Assembly: GCA_965240325.2 (NCBI GenBank)
Contig: OZ251231.1
Coordinates: 1,240,001 to 1,304,000, forward strand
Origin: Rebecca billardiae RCC1528
Taxonomy: Eukaryota > Protista > Haptophyta
Direction of reading: 5' to 3'
DNA: 64,000 nucleotides
Each line of letters begins with the position of its first letter. Position 1 is the stretch's first letter. This document shows positions 47,206 to 55,012 of this stretch, one piece after another. The notes under the pieces were generated by a model that ran no database searches, had not been told where the DNA came from, and saw only the letters and a program-made list of their open reading frames with translations. The translations under genes were made by a program, and so were the position numbers.

Positions 47206-48450
47206 TGGCCCGAGCTGCCCGCGGCTGTGCGCGTGTCCAACAAGACGAGCCCCCCCCGACCCCCCGAGGCCGGCACCGCCGCCCGCGAAGCACTGCGCGA
47301 ATAATGCGTTCGTCCATTTTCACGAGGCGCACCAGCCACCAGCTGGTTAAGTAAATAGGTACTAGTATGAGATTTAACAGCAGAACTGTTTGTGATGATT
47401 AAGAACTACGGCGTATTGATGAGCTAAAGTACGGTGACGATGAATTTACGGCTCACTATGATGATACAGTACTCGGATTACTCGCTGATACGCGCCTCCC
47501 CCGGCCGCCGAGGCCGCCGGCTGCCGAGAGTCGTACGCGCGCTTCCCCCCGGGGTAGCTCTGTGCCACTCGGTGGCCTTCGGTTTGTCTCGGTTCGCTGA
47601 CCTCCCCGCGCGTCGGACGACAACGCTTCACCACCATGTCGGCAGGTGCCAAGCTCGCAGCGTCAGGCTGCGGCACCCCGACTTGACGTGATTGTTGAAT
47701 CCGTGAAGACGGCTCACACTTCACAGTGTTCTCCGTGCAGAGGTTACTTTGCGGGCGTCCAGGAGCTGCGCCGGCACGCACGGGGCTTCGTTGAGCGTCT
47801 TTCCGGCTGTATCGCTGGCTAGGGCGGTGACTCGGTGTAGCGTGTTGTGTGACAGTACCCTTTGGTTTCTTGCTGCATGAGGCCGCTTACGGTTCATCCG
47901 CGGCCCACGCAGCTGACGCGGTCACGTGCCAGAGACTGGTTCCGACGCGTCAGGTACGAGCAGCCTCGATGCTGCATGGCAGCTTTGTTTGGAAACATCC
48001 GCAGTGCGCCGGAAGGGGCAAGCGGTTCGGCTCAGGAAGCGCTCAGCATGGTGTCACCCAAAGCCCGCGCTCAAGTCAAGGGTCGCCGGGCCGTTCATCA
48101 AGCCGGTCCGGCAGGCTCATGATCAGCCGGGCAGCCGGCCGCCCGGCGCCCGGCAGCTGGCAGCAGCCTGGCACCGGACGCGTGTTAAACTGACCAAGGC
48201 AGTGACCAACGGTCCGGCTTCATCCGGAACGAATCCACTGCCGGGCTGGGCGCAAGCTGAAGAAGCTGGGGCGAGGCGGGCGCCAAGCGCTCGCGGCCGG
48301 CCGCTGCGCAGGCGGGTGAGCAAGCAGCCGCAGAGCGGCTGGATGAAGGCAGCTGCGCCGGGAGCCAACAACTGGGAGCTCGTCGCAGGCGTCGCCGGTG
48401 CACGCGCGCGCGCTCGAGCCGAGCCTGCCGCGCGGCGGGCTCGGCGTCGC

Positions 48451-51044
48451 ATGCCCATGCGCAAGACGCGCGGCGCGACCAAGCGCGAGCCCGATGCGCC
48501 GCTCTACGCCGAGGGCCTCCTGCACTCCGAGCACGTGCTCAAGCGTCGCTTCCTCGGCGCGGGCACGGTGCGCCGCCTGCGCGCGCGCGCGCGCGCGCGC
48601 GCGCGCCCGGGGGGGGGGCGGGGAGGCATGCGGCGCACGCGCTCGCCCCGGCTCGGGGTTGGAGATGGGATGCGTCCTCGCGGCCGGCCTTCGTCCGGCC
48701 CTGCCGCGCCATGCCGTGTGCTCCGCGCGCGCGCGCGCGCGCTCGCCGGTAAACGCTGTGCGCCCTGCACACGCGTCGTCTGCGCGGCCCAGCGCACGAG
48801 CGCACGCCCGCGCGCCGCGTGTGCGCGCACGAGCGCTCTTGCCACGTTGCGTGCCGCCCTGGCTCTCGCCTGCCGCGCGCTCGCGCGCGCCGCTGCGCCG
48901 AGCTCACGCGCGCGTGCGCTCCGCGCGCGCGTGCGCACGCCGCCTCGCCGCTTCGCCGCGCAGGACGGGCACGCGGTCTTCCGCAGCGAGGCCGACGGCC
49001 CGGCGGAGGCCATGGCTGTGGACGTGCCGCACGACGACTCGTCCCCATCCGCCTCGGAGCCGCCCACGCCCGCCGCCGAACGGCCGCCGCCCCGCGCGGC
49101 CGTCGGCTGCCACGGCTCCGGTCGGAGTGACGAGTGTGATGTGCGGCTGCTGCCGGCGCGCTCCGCCGAGCCGGCCGACGCCGCGGCCGCGATGGAGGTG
49201 GACAGCGAGCGGGTACACGGCGGCGTGAATGGCCGCGCCACGCCCGACCTCAAGGCCGTCCGCGTCTCCGTCCCATCCCTCGCCCTCTCCATGTGCTCAC
49301 CCGTGCAGCCGCCGCGCGCGGCCGACCGCGAGCGCGCCGCCGACGGTGGCCGCCCGGCGGATGCGCCGCTCACGCCGCCCGCGGTCTCGCCGGCGATGGC
49401 GACGGAGGCGACGGGCAGCGTGGACGTGCTCCTCGCCGTGTGCCGCCCGGACCCGCCGCCCGCCGCGGACGAGCCCGCGCGCATTGTCTGTGCGCTCCGC
49501 TCGCAGCCGGCTCAACTGGCGCTGCGGCCGGCATGGCTGGCGGCCGAGCTCGCGCGCGCCGCCTCGCGGCTCGGCCTCGGCGCGCGCGCTCTGAGCGCGG
49601 AGCTCGGCGTGGAGCCGAGCTGCCTGCGCGCGTGGTGCCGCGCCGCGGGCGACTCCGCCCACGCGCCGGACCTGAGCGAGCGCGCGCGCGCCTGGCTTGC
49701 CTCCGTGCGCACGGGACAGCGCCGCGCGCGCGCCGAGGCGCTGGTGCCTGACGAGAGTCCGGGCGACGAGTCCGGCGCGGTGGACGCGGCCGGGGGCTCG
49801 ACGGTGACCCCCGTGCAGCCGCCCGGCGGACGCGCGCTGCACACGCCCCTCAACGCGCACGCCGGCACGCTGATCACGCCGGTCACGCTGCCGGCGCCGC
49901 AGGATGCGCGTGCGCTCACTCTGTCGGGAGAGAGCGGCGGTGCGGCGGACGCGGAGGAGGACGATGGCGGCGCGTCGCGTGGCAGCCTGGGCGCGCCGGC
50001 GCCGGCGCGCAGCGCGGTGGCGGACGGCAGCCACGAGGGCGGCATGCCGCGCGGCGCCGTGCAGCTGCCGCGCAAGCGCTCGCGCCACGCCGCGTCAGCC
50101 ACGCTCGGCGGCGGCGCCGCCGGCGCGGACGGCGGCGCGGAGGGCGGCGGCGCGAGTGCGGGCGACTCGCTCGACGCGCAGGCGACCGAGCGGCTCCGCG
50201 AGCGCCTGCGCGCGAAGCTCGCGCAGCGCGCGTGCTCCGTCAACGCCGCCGCGGTCGAGATGGGACTGGAGATGGCCGCGGTGCGCAAGTGGCTCTCAGG
50301 TCTTGATCGGCCGTGGGTGACGCCGCACGTCGCCCGGTGGGTGGCTCAGGAGGCGCCGCTGCGAGCCGGCGGCGGCGGCGGGAGCGGCGCGCGCACGCCG
50401 CGCACGCCGCCCGCCGCCGAGGAGCGTGGCGCGACCTCGCCGGGGCGCAGCGCGCAGCCCGCTCACGCGCAGCGCGAGCCGCCGCCGCCGCTCGAGCCTA
50501 GGCCTGCGCACGGCGGCGCGCGCGGCGCCGAGCACGGCGACAGGAGCGGTGGCGGCGGGCGGCCGGGCGCGTGCGCGCGCGCAGCTGATGCGGACGCGCC
50601 GCCGCGCGACGCCGCGCCGCCGGGCGGCATCGGTCCGGGCGGCGCTTCAGTCCGGCTCAAGCTGAACCTCGGCCGCTTGCCGTCAGTGCACGGCGCGCCG
50701 CGCGTGTGCGCGCAGCTGGACGTGCTCCGGTACGGCGGGCCGAGCCACGCCGAGGGCCTGCGCGCGCGGTGCCACGCGGCGCTGAGCTCGCTCAACTGCC
50801 CCGTGAGCCAGGCGGCGAAGCAGATGGGCGTCGAGGTGACGAGCGTGCGCCGCTGGCTGCGCGGCGAAGACAAGGGCTGGGTCACGCCGCGCGTCGAGGG
50901 CTGGCTCCGGCACCGCGTGCGCGAGACGGCGGGGCTCGCGCCTCATCTGCTTCCGTTTGCACACCGCGGGCACACACCGATCATCACGGCCGCTGCCGGT
51001 GGCGGTGGTGGCAGCGGCGCGGCGCACGAGGCCGACGCGCATCT

Positions 51045-51080
<36 letters not shown>

Positions 51081-54000
51081 GGGCCGCAAGCGCGCGCTCA
51101 GTGCGGACGCTGGCCGCGGCGGCGGTCACGGCCCGCTGCCGCCGTCGCCTCTCCTCACGTGGAGCGCACACGGCGCGCTCGGCGGCGGCGGCGGCGGCTC
51201 GGCGGCGGCGCTCGCCGGCCGCATCTCGCCGTTCGGCGCGCACTCGCCCGCCGCCGGGTGTCACCGTCCAGAGAGTGCTCCCCCTGTGCTCAGCCGACCG
51301 GGCTCGGCTGGACCTCCGGAGGATGTCTGGTGCGGTGACGAGCTGGGCGGCCTGCCGCCGCTGCACGGCGGCGTCTGGGGCGGCGCCGAGGCGGCGGCCA
51401 TGCTGGACGGGCTGCGCAGCGCGTGCCACCGCCGCCTGGCGGAGCTCAAGTGCCCCGTGAGCCAGGCGGCGAAGCAGATGGGCGTCGAGGTGACGAGCGT
51501 GCGCCGCTGGCTGCGCGGCGAAGACAAGGGCTGGGTCACGCCGCGCGTCGAGGGCTGGCTGGCCGCCACGGCCGAGAGCGCCGGGCGCGGCTCGCTCGGC
51601 GCCGACACCTTGCTTGCCGGCCGCACGGCGACGCCGTCGCCGCGCCTCGGCGCGGGCGCGGGCGCGGGCTCGAGCGTCGCGCCGGGCGCGGCCGGCGGCG
51701 CGTGGCTCGGGCGGCAGCTGCCGGCGAGCCCCCTCCCGGCCTCCCCGCACCCGCAGCACAGTGGCAGCTTCTTCTGCGCCGACATCGGCAGCGGCGCGCT
51801 CGAGCTCGCGGGCCCGCCGCCGCCCTCCGAGCTCACCGCCGCGACGGCGCGCGCCGCGCCGGACGAGAGTGTCGCGCACTGGCTTGCGCACCGACTGCAT
51901 GCACTCGGCGTGTCGCAGGCGCAGGCGGCGCACCAGATGGGCGTACGGCAGGAGATGCTCGCGCGCTGGCTGCGCCGGCTGCGCGCGCCCGAGCGCGCGC
52001 ACTCGCTCTCGGCGCTGCAGCTCGCCAACATGCGCGCGTGCGTGCTGAACTGGCTGGCGAGCGACGCGCGCGCGCGCTCGCACACGCCGCAGCCGCACGG
52101 CTGCGGGCACGACGCGGAGCTTGCGGGGCCGTACACTGCCGCGCTGCTCGCGGCGGGCGGCGGCGGCGCGGGAGGGCTCGGCGCGCTGGTCGCTATGGAC
52201 GACGACGCCGGCGGCGCGGGCGCGTGCGGCGCGCACGGCGTGGATGCGGAGGACGACGTGGCGCGCGAGCTCGAGCTTGCGGACGGCGCGGACGACGGCG
52301 CGGATGCGGAGATGGGCGCCGAGGCCGACGAATGGTTCGGCCACGCCAAGCCGGGAGCAGCCGACGCGCGCCCGTGGCGCACGCACCCGCTGCACGCGCC
52401 GCCGCCGCCGCCGCCGCCGCCTGTCGCGCTGGCCGCCCGGGCCGGCCTTGGCGGCGGCGCGGGCGGCGCAGAGGACACTCAGGGAGATAACGGGCTCGAG
52501 GATGCAGTGCGCGCGGCCGCGCGCCGCGTCGTCCTCTCGCGGCCCACGCCGCGCTGGTCGCACGCCGCGCCGCTGCCCGGCCGGCAGCACTCGGCGGGCG
52601 AGGCGTTGGAAGCGAGCCGCGCGCCCGCGGCCGACGCTGCCGGTGGCGGCGGCGACGCGGCCGCGGCGGCGGCGGCCGCGGCGGCGGCTGCGCGCGCCGC
52701 GGCGGCCGAGGACGAGGAGCTGATCGACACGGTCTCGATCCTGCACCGCCTCTCGAACGCGCCCTCGCCCGTCACGCCGCACCACAAGCGGCTCGCTGAC
52801 ACGCCGCTGCACTGGGCCTCTGGCGGGATTGGCGGCGGCGCGCGCAGCATGCTCGGCGGCGCCGGCCACGGCCACGGCGGCGGCGGCTGCGCCGGGCATG
52901 CGCCCCCCCACCCGCCTCTGTTTGGCGGTGCCGGCGGCGCGAGCGGCGTCTCGATGGGCCGCGCGGCGCCGGAGCCGAGCCACGGCGCGAGCGCGCCGCC
53001 GCCGTGCTCCGCAGGGCTGGCGGCGGCGGCGGCGACGGGCGAGCCCGCGGCCGCGCCTGCCGAAACGCTCACGCCCGCCGCCTCAGGCCGAGTGACGCCT
53101 CCGCCCGGTCACGGCGCGCGGCTGCAGCGGCCGCAGCCGCCGCCGCAGCCGCAGCCGCAGCAGCAGCGCGCGCGGCTCTCGCCCTCGGAGTGCGCGGCGC
53201 CCGACGCGGCGGAGGCGATCCTCTCGCTCTCGGCCGCGCCGTCGCCGGTCGCGCCCGCGAACACGCGCCTGCTGCTGCCTCGTGTCGGGGCGACAGTGCG
53301 CGCGCGCCCGCCCTCGCCGCTGGTGCGGCCTCCCTCTGCGGCGGGTGCGGCCGGCTGCGGCTGCGGCGCGCAGCCACCGAGCGCGTGCGCTCTCGGCAGC
53401 GCGGCGGGCGCGCTCGGCGCGCTGGCCGCCGCCGGCACCGCGGCGCCCTCCGCCTTCGCGCCGGACGCGGCGTGGGCGCACGCGCGAGGCTCGGCTTCGC
53501 TCTCGGCGCAGCCGGGCTGCTACGGCGCGCCGGGCTGCGGCGGCGGCTATGGTGGCGGTGGCGGCTGCGCCGCGCAGCAGCAGCAGCAGCAGCAGCAGCA
53601 CGCGCTGGTGATGACTCCGACACGCTGCGCGCCGCCGTGCGCGCCGCCCGCGCACAAGCCGCCGCCTACGCCGCCCCCGTGCGCGCGCCGGATGCCTCTG
53701 TTGAACGGAGCGGCGGGCGTCGGACTTGGCCACCTGGGCGGCGCGCACGGCGCACCGTCGGCCGCGGGCGCGGCGCTGGCGCTCGCCGAGGGCGCGGCCG
53801 GCTGCGCGCTGGAGGACGACAGCGCGCACCGCGCGCACCGCGCGCCCACCACACCCTCGCGCTCAACCGACGGCGGCGGTCGGCTGGCTGCCGGCCTGAG
53901 CCCGCCGCCTACGCCGCTCAGTCAACCGTGCGCGCCGCGCGCCGCGCGATGCACGCGCACACCGCGCGCTTTGCGCCGCGCGCGCTCAGCCGCGCCTCGC

Positions 54001-54781
54001 GCCGTGCCCTCCCCACGTCTCCGCGCGCGCGCGCCGCCGCCATTCCTTGTCCCCCTTTGTCTCCGTGTATTCCGCTCCGCCAGCTCGTCCGCGCGCCGCG
54101 CCAAGTCGTGGACGCGCGAGGAGGACGAGCGTCTCCGCGATTACGTCCGGCAGCACGGCGCGGGCAAGTGGTCGCGTGTGGCGCACGAGCTGCCGGGTGC
54201 GTGCCGCCGCCGGTGGCGCCGCCGCCGGTGGCGCCGATGGCGCCGCGCCCTCCGCGCGGGGCGCGGGCGCGCGCGCGCCCGCCCGGGCCAGCCGCTCACG
54301 CGCGCGCTCTTGTACCCCTACCCCTTACCCCTTACCCCCTACCCCTACCCCTACCCCTACCCCTAACCGCACGACAGGCCGCACCGGGAAGCAGTGTCGT
54401 GAGCGCTGGTGCAACCAGCTGAGCTCAGACATCAACCGCGCGCTGTGGAGCATGGAGGAGGACCGGACCATCATCGAGGCGCACCGGACGCACGGTAAGC
54501 TGGGCGGCGCGGCCGCGCGCGCCGCGCGCGTGAATGGTGCCGGCCCAGCCCACGGCGCGCGCGCCCTGTGCTGCATCGTTCTGAGTGTCTCGCCGCCGCC
54601 GCCCCGCCGCCGCCGCCGCCGCGCGCGCGGCGCAGGCAACAGCTGGGCGCGCATCGCGCGGCTGCTGCCCGGCCGCACGGACAACCAAGTCAAGAACCGC
54701 TGGAACTCCACCCTCGCCAAGCGCGCGGGCTGCTCCCCGTCGGCCGAGCCGTCGTGCGACTCGCCGCGCGCAGGCGGGTCG

Positions 54782-54816
<35 letters not shown>

Positions 54817-55012
54817 GCACCGCGGCGGCAGCTCGGCTGAGCCGAGCGAGGCCGACGACTCGGTGACGGACGCCGGGAGCACGGCCGGCGGCGTGGGCGC
54901 GCGCGCGCCCAGCGACGGCGCGAGCGCGGACGGCAGCTTGAGTGTCGGCGCGGGCTACGCGGGTGGCGCGGGGCAGTGGATGCCACGCGGCCAACCGGCG
55001 GAGGCGCGCTGA
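48451..55012 (+). CDS. R2R3-MYB transcription factor with five Cro/XRE-like HTH repeats; introns 48568-48963, 53928-54083, 54197-54377, 54495-54635
   Basis: The spliced C-terminus gives [31 protein letters not shown] and [34 protein letters not shown]. Total about 1895 aa. The first two introns are in frame and therefore inferred. Confidence 0.85.
50797..51560 (+). repeat. 110-bp exact direct repeat within the CDS (50797-50906 and 51451-51560)
   Basis: Both copies encode [37 protein letters not shown] with identical DNA. Confidence 0.93.
54313..54368. repeat. Telomere-like (TACCCC)n tract inside an intron
   Basis: About 8 units of TACCCC/TTACCCC ending in CCCTAACC. Confidence 0.85.

What the first reader, a model, noticed from the sequence alone, without database searches (positions are those of the whole stretch)
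48451..55012. Transcription factor combining five phage/bacterial-style Cro/XRE HTH modules with a C-terminal R2R3-MYB
Seen: five roughly 50-aa modules of the pattern L..L..S...AA.(E/Q)MGV.....R.WL.G...(V)..WL at about 49531, 50188, 50752, 51406 and 51877. They sit in low-complexity linkers in the same frame as MYB repeat R2. A duplicated short helix ([14 protein letters not shown] / [14 protein letters not shown]) is also present. Known: this pattern matches the lambda-repressor-like HTH fold (XRE/Cro, MuB N-domain, POU-specific/CUT relatives), and R2R3-MYBs normally carry only an N-terminal MYB domain. Inference: this is a multivalent DNA-binding architecture that I do not recognise as described.
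Basis: partly seen in the sequence, partly recalled or inferred. Interest (0 to 1): 0.75.

Follow-up and report, generated by a model that had tools for sequence, protein, structure and literature searches.

The report
Multi-HTH plus MYB algal regulator gene
A GC-rich alga, apparently a haptophyte, has a real gene whose protein strings five small phage-repressor-type DNA-binding modules on floppy linkers in front of a MYB DNA-binding domain, a layout I found described nowhere and in only two other genes.

Summary
One open frame (window 47926-54366, 2146 codons, about 80% GC) carries five HTH-like modules and the first half of MYB repeat R2. Two GT-AG introns complete a canonical R2R3 MYB that ends at 55012.

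Third-codon-position GC bias (0.87-0.98) marks this frame as coding from about 48.9 kb to 53.9 kb.

A profile built only from relatives outside the window finds modules 2-4 at 35-41 bits. Module 5 scores 10 bits and module 1 is not significant. The best hit elsewhere in the window's six frames is 6.9 bits.

AlphaFold models of module 3 (pLDDT 90.5) and module 1 (85.9) are four-helix bundles. Every top structural match is a lambda-repressor-like domain: Oct4 POU-specific Z 9.1, MuB N-domain 8.9, CUT, HipB and Cro-type regulators. The closest sequences are small bacterial or phage Cro/XRE proteins.

A paralog on contig 34 and a metagenomic ortholog (P0008) each put two modules, the same two short motifs and a C-terminal R2R3 MYB in one uninterrupted ORF. 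This argues strongly for a single protein.

No other such protein turned up, and a haptophyte transcription-factor catalogue lists no such class.

DNA binding by the modules is inferred, not shown. The 5' end is uncertain.

Verdict: a real, rare, lineage-restricted new variant built from known folds.

The parts
48451..48567 (+). Possible first coding exon: first in-frame ATG, peptide begins MPMRK (the paralog and P0008 begin MKRK). Uncertain.
   Evidence: GC3-GC2 is +0.25 at 48406-48585 and is then lost. Sequence read. N-termini of the relatives.
48568..48963 (+). Possible in-frame intron of 396 nt (GTGCGCC...GCGCAG) rich in (GC)n and G runs. An alternative start is ATG 49012.
   Evidence: No codon-position GC bias at 48526-48885. 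Splice-like ends read. Not verified by any transcript.
48964..54196 (+). Long coding exon: five HTH modules, low-complexity Gly/Ala/Pro linkers, two short motifs and the first half of MYB R2.
   Evidence: Uninterrupted frame. GC3 0.87-0.98. Pfam hits.
49501..49722 (+). HTH module 1, the most divergent (recognition helix [11 protein letters not shown]).
   Evidence: Alignment A1. AlphaFold pLDDT 85.9 with four helices. Structural search: MuB-N Z 8.0, HNF-6 CUT 7.8, SATB1 CUT 7.3. The external HMM is not significant here.
50170..50349 (+). HTH module 2 (recognition helix [11 protein letters not shown]).
   Evidence: External HMM 36.6 bits. 41% identical to paralog module A.
50734..50913 (+). HTH module 3 (recognition helix [11 protein letters not shown]).
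   Evidence: External HMM 40.5 bits. AlphaFold pLDDT 90.5 with helices 3-19, 24-31, 35-42 and 50-59. Structural searches.
51388..51567 (+). HTH module 4, with helices 2-4 identical to module 3.
   Evidence: External HMM 34.9 bits. 117 nt are 99% identical to module 3.
51856..52080 (+). HTH module 5, divergent, with a longer loop between helices 3 and 4 (recognition helix [11 protein letters not shown]).
   Evidence: Pfam HTH_3 20.1 bits alone. It is the best stretch of the whole-protein HTH_3 hit of 28.4 bits. External HMM 10.3 bits.
50790..50906 (+). Gene-conversion-like tract shared with 51444-51560. Identity is 99% inside and falls off sharply in both flanks.
   Evidence: the repeat finder family D3. 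Pairwise DNA alignment.
52738..52779 (+). Short motif copy 1 ([14 protein letters not shown]): an amphipathic helix followed by a Pro-rich tail.
   Evidence: Similar motifs occur twice in the paralog and twice in P0008.
53215..53256 (+). Short motif copy 2 ([14 protein letters not shown]).
54103..54196 (+). MYB R2, helices 1-2 ([10 protein letters not shown]...HELPG), at the end of the long exon.
   Evidence: Pfam Myb_DNA-binding 39.6 bits on ORF residues 2060-2099.
54197..54377 (+). Intron of 181 nt (GTGCGT...ACAG) containing a (CCCCTA)-like repeat. It splits the Gly codon of LPG|RTGKQC.
   Evidence: Read from the sequence. The frame shift matches the change from the long ORF to ORF 54047-55012.
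54378..54494 (+). Exon holding MYB R2 helix 3 and the first half of R3 ([14 protein letters not shown]...EAHRTHG).
   Evidence: Pfam Myb hits in ORF 54047-55009. Sequence.
54495..54635 (+). Intron of 141 nt (GTAAGC...GCGCAG), in frame.
   Evidence: Read from the sequence.
54636..55012 (+). Last exon: the rest of MYB R3 ([24 protein letters not shown]), a Gly-rich and acidic tail, and the stop codon TGA at 55010-55012.
   Evidence: Pfam Myb_DNA-binding 64.7 bits for ORF 54047-55009. Sequence.

Best explanation
This is one nuclear gene of a GC-rich alga, apparently a haptophyte. It encodes a long, mostly disordered protein of about 1,800-2,000 residues. Five small four-helix domains of the Cro/XRE (lambda-repressor-like) type are spaced along Gly/Ala/Pro-rich linkers. 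Two copies of a short helix-plus-proline motif follow, and a canonical R2R3 MYB domain sits at the C-terminus. The most likely working model is a sequence-specific transcription regulator. In this model the MYB domain supplies the main DNA anchor. The tethered HTH modules add weak, independent contacts with nearby short sites, giving avidity for clustered or repeated sites. This is the same logic as metazoan Cux/CDP, ONECUT, SATB and POU factors, where lambda-like CUT or POU-specific domains are tethered to a homeodomain. Shown here: the architecture, the predicted fold, its conservation in a paralog and an ortholog, and its rarity. Inferred: nuclear role, DNA binding by the modules, and cooperation with the MYB domain. 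The sequence kinship of the modules with small bacterial or phage Cro-like proteins suggests an acquired prokaryotic or viral domain that was duplicated in place. Modules 3 and 4 were then homogenised by gene conversion.
For: Coding and single gene:
- The frame is 2146 codons without a stop at about 80% GC.
- GC3 greatly exceeds GC2 continuously from about 48.9 to 53.9 kb.
- MYB R2 starts in the same ORF, and two GT-AG introns restore the canonical LPGRTGKQC and HGNSW junctions.
- The paralog G000:C34:951527-956236 has two modules, two motifs and a complete R2R3 MYB in one 1569-codon open frame without introns.
- P0008, a 1060-aa single ORF on a 4.9-kb JGI metagenome contig, has the same layout.
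- Against the paralog, P0008's MYB is 87% identical, module A 70% and module B about 43%, while the linkers do not align.

Fold:
- AlphaFold gives pLDDT 90.5 and 85.9 with four helices each.
- Foldseek's top rows are all XRE, HipB, MuB-N, P22 C2 or MBF1, with TM 0.65-0.77.
- VIA-align gives Oct4 POU-specific Z 9.1 (rmsd 1.7 A over 60 residues), MuB-N 8.9 and HNF-6 CUT 7.6. All 50 rows are lambda-repressor-like.

Sequence:
- The PDB profile search is led by XRE (3bs3, E 0.005), HigA and Cro.
- Whole-protein Pfam HTH_3 scores 28.4 bits in the window gene and 26.2 in the paralog, against a cut-off of 23.
- The best single-domain matches among 1.84 billion proteins are 62-97-aa Cro-like proteins sharing the (S/T)V(S/R)RWL(S/R)G helix.
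- The nearest ESM Atlas clusters are phage and bacterial Cro/C1 HTH proteins.

Specific association:
- In this genome the module profile matches only these two MYB genes.
Against: - No transcript, protein or binding data exist here. The exon joins are read from the sequence only, and I did not build or search the joined spliced protein.
- No single module reaches a Pfam gathering score. The sub-threshold hits include transposase-type and homeodomain-like HTH families (HTH_28, HTH_29, HTH_23, HTH_Tnp_ISL3), so sequence alone does not fix the HTH class.
- The structural Z scores (7-9) are in the range the tool warns can reflect a common helical arrangement.
- The AlphaFold alignments held only seven sequences. 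For module 1 the other modules served as its alignment.
- Lambda-like domains can also serve protein binding (MuB-N, MBF1, antitoxins), so DNA binding is not assured.
- dN/dS between the paralog and P0008 is unconvincing for module A (about 0.76 over 37 codons).
Confidence: 0.7

Rival explanations
1. The architecture is the same, but the HTH modules are protein-interaction or scaffold domains rather than DNA readers. They might recruit partners or mediate self-association on a disordered scaffold, and only the MYB domain touches DNA.
For: Structural neighbours include non-classical users of the fold: the MuB N-domain (Z 8.9 and 8.0), MBF1/EDF1, and HipB and HigA antitoxins. The modules are monomeric units on long linkers, whereas most XRE repressors need dimerisation for tight binding (established knowledge). 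Conserved short motifs between the array and the MYB domain suggest partner binding.
Against: The helix-3 signature (S/T)V(S/R)RWL(S/R)G is Arg-rich and matches that of small bacterial or phage Cro/XRE-type proteins. The best structural matches, POU-specific and CUT domains, bind DNA as tethered monomers. Fusion to another DNA-binding domain is typical of composite DNA readers.
Confidence: 0.2
2. These are two genes. An HTH-array gene and a separate downstream small R2R3-MYB gene happen to be in frame in a stop-poor, GC-rich region.
For: No transcript evidence is available. Codon-position GC bias weakens at 53926-54225 (GC3 0.83 against GC2 0.74). A pyrimidine tract followed by CAG at about 54083 could be an acceptor or part of a 5' region.
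Against: The paralog and P0008 carry modules, motifs and MYB in the same order within single uninterrupted ORFs. The module family occurs nowhere else in the genome. There is no stop between the array and R2. R2 has no nearby in-frame ATG with its own coding signal other than M at about 53690, which lies inside the biased frame.
Confidence: 0.05
3. The modules are relics of a transposase or paired-type three-helix HTH (homeodomain-like), not of the Cro/XRE class. This would make the gene a domesticated transposon DNA-binding array fused to MYB.
For: There are sub-threshold Pfam hits to HTH_Tnp_ISL3 (22.3 bits), HTH_29, HTH_28, HTH_23 and DUF746 on modules 3-5.
Against: The predicted domain has a fourth helix carrying an invariant Trp, and all 60 residues align to lambda-like domains. 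HTH_3 passes its whole-protein cut-off in two genes. The nearest full-length sequence matches are Cro/XRE-like. No transposase catalytic domain or terminal repeats were seen around the gene.
Confidence: 0.05

Closest known systems
Metazoan CUT-homeodomain and POU factors (Cux/CDP with three CUT repeats plus a homeodomain; ONECUT/HNF-6; SATB1/2; Oct/Brn POU factors)
   Same: One to several lambda-repressor-like four-helix domains are tethered by flexible linkers to a C-terminal homeodomain-like DNA-binding domain. POU-specific and CUT domains are among the best structural matches: Oct4 Z 9.1, Brn-5 7.6, HNF-6 7.6, SATB1 6.9, Cux-2 6.8.
   Different: No sequence membership: Pfam CUT and Pou models gave no hit at E<=1. 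The partner domain is R2R3 MYB, not a homeodomain. There are five modules, with much longer low-complexity linkers. The lineage is an alga, so this is best read as convergence.
Bacterial and phage Cro/C1/XRE-family HTH proteins (Pfam HTH_3 clan; P22 C2, lambda cI, 434 repressor, HipB, HigA, C-proteins)
   Same: They share the fold and the recognition-helix signature (S/T)-V/I-S/R-R-W-x-x-G. They are the nearest sequences (P0133, P0125). PDB profile hits and ESM Atlas neighbours point the same way. Tandem arrays of such modules also exist in bacteria (P0005, P0047, P0083).
   Different: The modules here are embedded in a eukaryotic, intron-containing, roughly 2,000-residue protein with a MYB domain. 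No dimerisation or sensor domain is present. Single modules fall below Pfam gathering scores.
R2R3 / c-Myb-type MYB transcription factors
   Same: Two canonical MYB repeats with regularly spaced Trp residues and the LPGRT(G/D) motifs. The nearest MYB domains to P0008, the ortholog of the paralog, are A-Myb/c-Myb-like at 54-61% identity.
   Different: The MYB domain is C-terminal, behind a long HTH array. None of the 69 nearest MYB proteins of 583-1855 aa carries the module.
Prymnesium polylepis PWWP protein with two HTH modules (P0067, EukProt EP00966_P127643)
   Same: A haptophyte protein with two full-length copies of a related XRE-type module (HTH_3 31.7 bits, HTH_37 32.9 bits) on acidic linkers.
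   Different: The partner is a PWWP chromatin-reader domain, not MYB. The module scores are lower (27.5 bits against my profile). I found no clear counterpart in this genome.
MBF1/EDF1
   Same: The one widely conserved eukaryotic protein with an XRE-type HTH. It appears among the structural hits.
   Different: It has a single domain, acts as a ribosome and co-activator bridging factor, and has no MYB domain. There is no specific sequence similarity.

Membership tests
Lambda-repressor-like / Cro-C1-XRE HTH (Pfam HTH_3 clan) | Compact four- or five-helix domain with the helix-turn-helix at helices 2-3 | tested here: met
   AlphaFold models of modules 3 and 1 (pLDDT 90.5 and 85.9) have four helices. 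All top Foldseek and VIA-align rows are lambda-like domains aligned over 55-60 residues. These are predictions, not solved structures.
Lambda-repressor-like / Cro-C1-XRE HTH (Pfam HTH_3 clan) | Sequence match to the family model above its curated threshold | tested here: inconclusive
   Whole-protein HTH_3 scores 28.4 bits (window gene) and 26.2 bits (paralog) against a cut-off of 23. The best single module scores only 20.1 bits, and modules 1-4 hit other HTH families below threshold.
Lambda-repressor-like / Cro-C1-XRE HTH (Pfam HTH_3 clan) | Sequence-specific DNA binding through helix 3 | not testable with these tools
   Only the conserved, Arg-rich helix-3 signature is seen.
R2R3 MYB | Two adjacent MYB repeats with conserved, regularly spaced Trp residues, matching Pfam Myb_DNA-binding | tested here: met
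   Tested exon by exon: 39.6 bits on the end of the long ORF and 64.7 bits on ORF 54047-55009. The junctions restore LPGRTGKQC and HGNSW. The joined protein was not built or searched.
POU-specific / CUT domain families | Sequence match to Pfam Pou or CUT, with an adjacent homeodomain | tested here: not met
   Neither model appears at E<=1 in the Pfam scan. No homeodomain is present. The resemblance is structural and architectural only.
Transposase-type HTH (HTH_28, HTH_29, HTH_23, HTH_Tnp_ISL3) | Score above the gathering threshold, and association with a transposase core | tested here: not met
   All scores are below the cut-offs (at most 22.3 bits against 24.6-28.1). No transposase domain is in the ORF.

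The most novel reading that the evidence does not exclude
A previously unrecognised class of eukaryotic DNA-binding domain, possibly restricted to haptophytes. A Cro-like domain captured from bacteria, phages or giant viruses became a modular building block of nuclear regulators (MYB fusions here, a PWWP fusion in Prymnesium). In this gene five independently binding modules plus MYB would read arrays of short sites, an independent reinvention of the metazoan CUT/POU-homeodomain principle, with gene conversion keeping two modules identical.
Probability: 0.35. Interest if true: 0.65.

Novelty: new variant of a known kind. Interest (0 to 1): 0.45.

Why it matters
Outside MBF1 and the animal POU, CUT and HNF1 families, lambda-repressor-type domains are rarely recognised in eukaryotic transcription factors. 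Haptophyte regulators are almost unstudied. The catalogue of haptophyte transcription factors I could read has no such class (PMC4827209).

The module is missed by Pfam at gathering thresholds. P0008, for example, is annotated only as MYB. These proteins are therefore currently filed as plain MYBs.

If the modules bind DNA, this is a natural example of an extendable multi-reader factor. It would be a convergent parallel to Cux, ONECUT and POU logic, and a possible case of a prokaryotic or viral DNA-binding domain being co-opted.

It is also a tractable test case. The domains are small and well predicted, and there are two paralogs with five and two modules.

Tried and rejected
1. Word-index protein searches found nothing beyond P0008 itself. 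I used the paralog's module region and P0008 module A. Low-complexity words probably swamped.
2. A search with P0008's MYB domain returned only generic A-Myb/c-Myb-like proteins at 61% identity or less. None of the 69 carries the module.
With A6, the metagenome scan confirmed none of its 468 pattern matches.
4. In the search of 1.84 billion proteins, most top hits are bacterial tandem-HTH arrays that score by summing generic HTH matches. I do not count them as relatives of the architecture.
5. Own-genome searches with Pfam HTH_3, P0041 and P0067 gave nothing useful. I therefore could not link this gene to the other tandem HTH array noted earlier in this genome (s1-363234).
6. dN/dS between the paralog and P0008 used too few codons, and the strong GC3 bias makes it indecisive.
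7. I rejected a spurious high-GC ORF as the explanation, on ORF length and GC3 periodicity.
8. I rejected an assembly-collapse explanation for the identity of modules 3 and 4, because the flanks differ.
9. Six literature searches found no XRE-plus-MYB description.
10. I did not identify the species. 'Haptophyte' rests on earlier notes of this scan and on the Prymnesium relative.
Full report
**What is there.** The window is G000:C14:1240001-1304000 of a 72-Mb, 41-contig, very GC-rich eukaryotic genome. Earlier notes of this scan call it a haptophyte; I did not test that myself. The + strand has an open frame from 47926 to 54366, 2146 codons in a region of 78-81% GC.

- At that composition a stop is expected roughly every 110 codons. 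The next-longest overlapping ORF is 766 codons.
- Codon-position GC shows a clear coding signature in this frame only. GC3 is 0.87-0.98, above GC1, which is above GC2 at 0.56-0.79, from about 48.9 kb to about 53.9 kb.
- Between about 48570 and 48880 the signature is absent and the sequence is (GC)n and G runs.
- So either ATG 48451 (MPMRK...) is the start and 48568-48963 is an in-frame 396-nt intron (GTGCGCC...GCGCAG), or translation starts at ATG 49012.
- The paralog and its ortholog start MKRK, a weak hint in favour of 48451.

**MYB end.** Pfam Myb_DNA-binding matches ORF residues 2060-2099 at 39.6 bits, the first two helices of R2. It matches ORF 54047-55009 at 64.7 bits. Reading the DNA gives the following structure:

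- The long exon ends at 54196 (..HELPG).
- Intron 54197-54377 (GTGCGT...ACAG, 181 nt).
- Exon 54378-54494 ([14 protein letters not shown]...EAHRTHG).
- Intron 54495-54635 (GTAAGC...GCGCAG, 141 nt).
- Last exon 54636-55012, with TGA at 55010-55012.

Both junctions restore canonical MYB sequence.

To avoid circularity I built an HMM only from the four modules of the two relatives and searched all six frames of the window.

| Module | Score (bits) | Note |
|---|---|---|
| 1 | 1.0 | not significant |
| 2 | 36.6 | |
| 3 | 40.5 | |
| 4 | 34.9 | |
| 5 | 10.3 | E 0.028 |
| best hit elsewhere in the window | 6.9 | |

- Scanned alone, no module reaches a Pfam gathering score.
- Module 5 gives HTH_3 at 20.1 bits. 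Modules 3 and 4 give HTH_Tnp_ISL3, HTH_29, HTH_28 and HTH_23 at 16-22 bits.
- Summed over the protein, HTH_3 reaches 28.4 bits against a cut-off of 23. In the paralog it reaches 26.2 bits, with HTH_31 at 27.3.

**Fold.** AlphaFold2 on the seven-module alignment gave pLDDT 90.5 and pTM 0.70 for module 3, with helices at 3-19, 24-31, 35-42 and 50-59. Module 1 gave pLDDT 85.9 with the same four helices.

- Foldseek against the PDB returned only weak E-values (0.3-1.4), as expected for 60 residues. Every top row is an XRE/Cro-type domain: HipB, ClgR, MuB N-domain, P22 C2, SinR, C.AhdI, lambda cI, MBF1. TM scores are 0.65-0.77.
- The Foldseek-independent search gave Oct4 POU-specific Z 9.1 (rmsd 1.7 A over 60 residues), MuB-N 8.9, HNF-6 CUT 7.6, Brn-5 7.6, and ClgR, C.AhdI and HipB at about 7.5. 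All 50 rows were lambda-repressor-like.
- Module 1 gave the same list: MuB-N 8.0, HNF-6 7.8, SATB1 7.3.
- The tool warns that Z below 8 can be a common helical arrangement. The weight here lies in the complete uniformity of the lists and the full-length alignments.
- A PDB sequence-profile search is led by an XRE protein (3bs3, E 0.005), HigA antitoxins and Cro proteins.
- ESM Atlas feature neighbours are phage and bacterial Cro/C1 HTH clusters at a score of 0.91.

**Relatives.** In the alga's own genome the module profile hits only one other locus, G000:C34:951977-952810.

- That locus lies in a 1569-codon uninterrupted open frame. It holds two modules near the N-terminus, two short motifs and a complete intron-less R2R3 MYB at the C-terminus (Myb 117 bits).
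- A profile search of 1.84 billion representative proteins gave 1271 hits at E<=1e-3. Most top hits are bacterial proteins with 5-12 generic HTH repeats.
- Among the 150 hits listed, only P0008 also has a MYB domain. It is a 1060-aa single ORF on a 4.9-kb JGI metagenome contig.
- P0008 is the ortholog of the contig-34 paralog in another organism. The MYB domain is 87% identical, module A 70%, module B about 43%, and the linkers are unalignable.
- This pattern of conserved islands in diverged linkers, and the same domain order in three genes, is the main argument that the modules are functional domains of one protein.
- The best single-domain matches are 62-97-aa Cro-like proteins (P0133, P0125). 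They share the (S/T)V(S/R)RWL(S/R)G helix at 49-57% identity over 28-37 residues.
- One named eukaryotic relative exists: a Prymnesium polylepis protein with a PWWP domain and two such modules (P0067).
- Word-index searches and a metagenome scan found no further HTH-plus-MYB protein.

**Short motif.[14 protein letters not shown] (52738-52779) and [14 protein letters not shown] (53215-53256) have counterparts in the relatives. These are ..MELVSLASTPPP and ..ALQELAALACASP in the paralog, and LELVSLASSPAP and ALQKLAALACG in P0008. In all three proteins they lie between the array and the MYB domain. I read them as a conserved linear motif: an amphipathic helix followed by Ser/Pro. Its function is unknown; a partner-binding or phospho-regulated site is a guess.

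**Gene conversion.** Modules 3 and 4 share 117 nt at 99% identity (50790-50906 and 51444-51560), covering helices 2-4. Helix 1 and both flanks are diverged. The synonymous sites are identical, so this is recent conversion or duplication of the core. The two modules would read the same target.

**How it probably works.** Shown: the architecture, the predicted fold and its conservation. Inferred: it is a nuclear regulator in which the R2R3 MYB binds a MYB-type site and the tethered monomeric lambda-like modules add contacts to nearby short sites. This gives avidity and selectivity for clustered sites. Cux/CDP (three CUT repeats plus a homeodomain), ONECUT, SATB and POU factors work this way (established knowledge).

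It is not a member of those families. The Pfam CUT and Pou models do not match and there is no homeodomain.

The main rival is that the modules bind proteins rather than DNA. Two genes, a transposase-type HTH origin and a chance ORF are all unlikely.

**Novelty.** I found no description of an XRE-type array fused to MYB. The haptophyte transcription-factor catalogue PMC4827209 contains none of the terms HTH, helix-turn-helix, XRE, lambda or MBF1. Absence from a limited library is not proof. I rate it a new variant of known kinds: real, rare and lineage-restricted, of moderate interest.

Noticed in passing
G000:C34:951527-956236 (L010:528-5237): A paralogous gene with two HTH modules, two short motifs and an intron-less C-terminal R2R3 MYB in one 1569-codon open frame. 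The window gene has two introns in its MYB domain, so intron content differs between the paralogs.
   Followed up: yes
window 50790-50906 and 51444-51560: A 117-nt tract is 99% identical between modules 3 and 4, with sharply diverged flanks. It looks like gene conversion confined to helices 2-4.
   Followed up: partly
window 54310-54367: The first MYB intron contains a run of CCCCTA/CCCTTA-like hexamers that resemble telomere repeats on the opposite strand. Translated in the long ORF's frame, this gives the [13 protein letters not shown] tail.
   Followed up: no
window 48575-48620 and 48720-48745: Long (GC)n tracts and a G9 run lie in the stretch without coding bias near the 5' end. They could form Z-DNA or G-rich structure in a possible first intron or 5' region.
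   Followed up: no
P0067 (EukProt Prymnesium polylepis P127643): A haptophyte protein joins a PWWP chromatin-reader domain to two XRE-type HTH modules on acidic linkers. The module type therefore appears in another regulatory context in haptophytes.
   Followed up: partly
P0041 and its cluster of 16 (P0151-P0164), marine metagenome contigs of 0.8-4 kb: These are 184-aa proteins with a coiled-coil-like N-terminus and two full-length XRE-type modules (HTH_3 44.6 bits). The origin, eukaryote or virus, is unknown.
   Followed up: no
window 51046-51079, 53577-53600, 54782-54815: In-frame (GGC)n and (CAG)n microsatellites encode poly-Gly and poly-Gln runs inside the linkers and the C-terminal tail. 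They are likely length-polymorphic.
   Followed up: no
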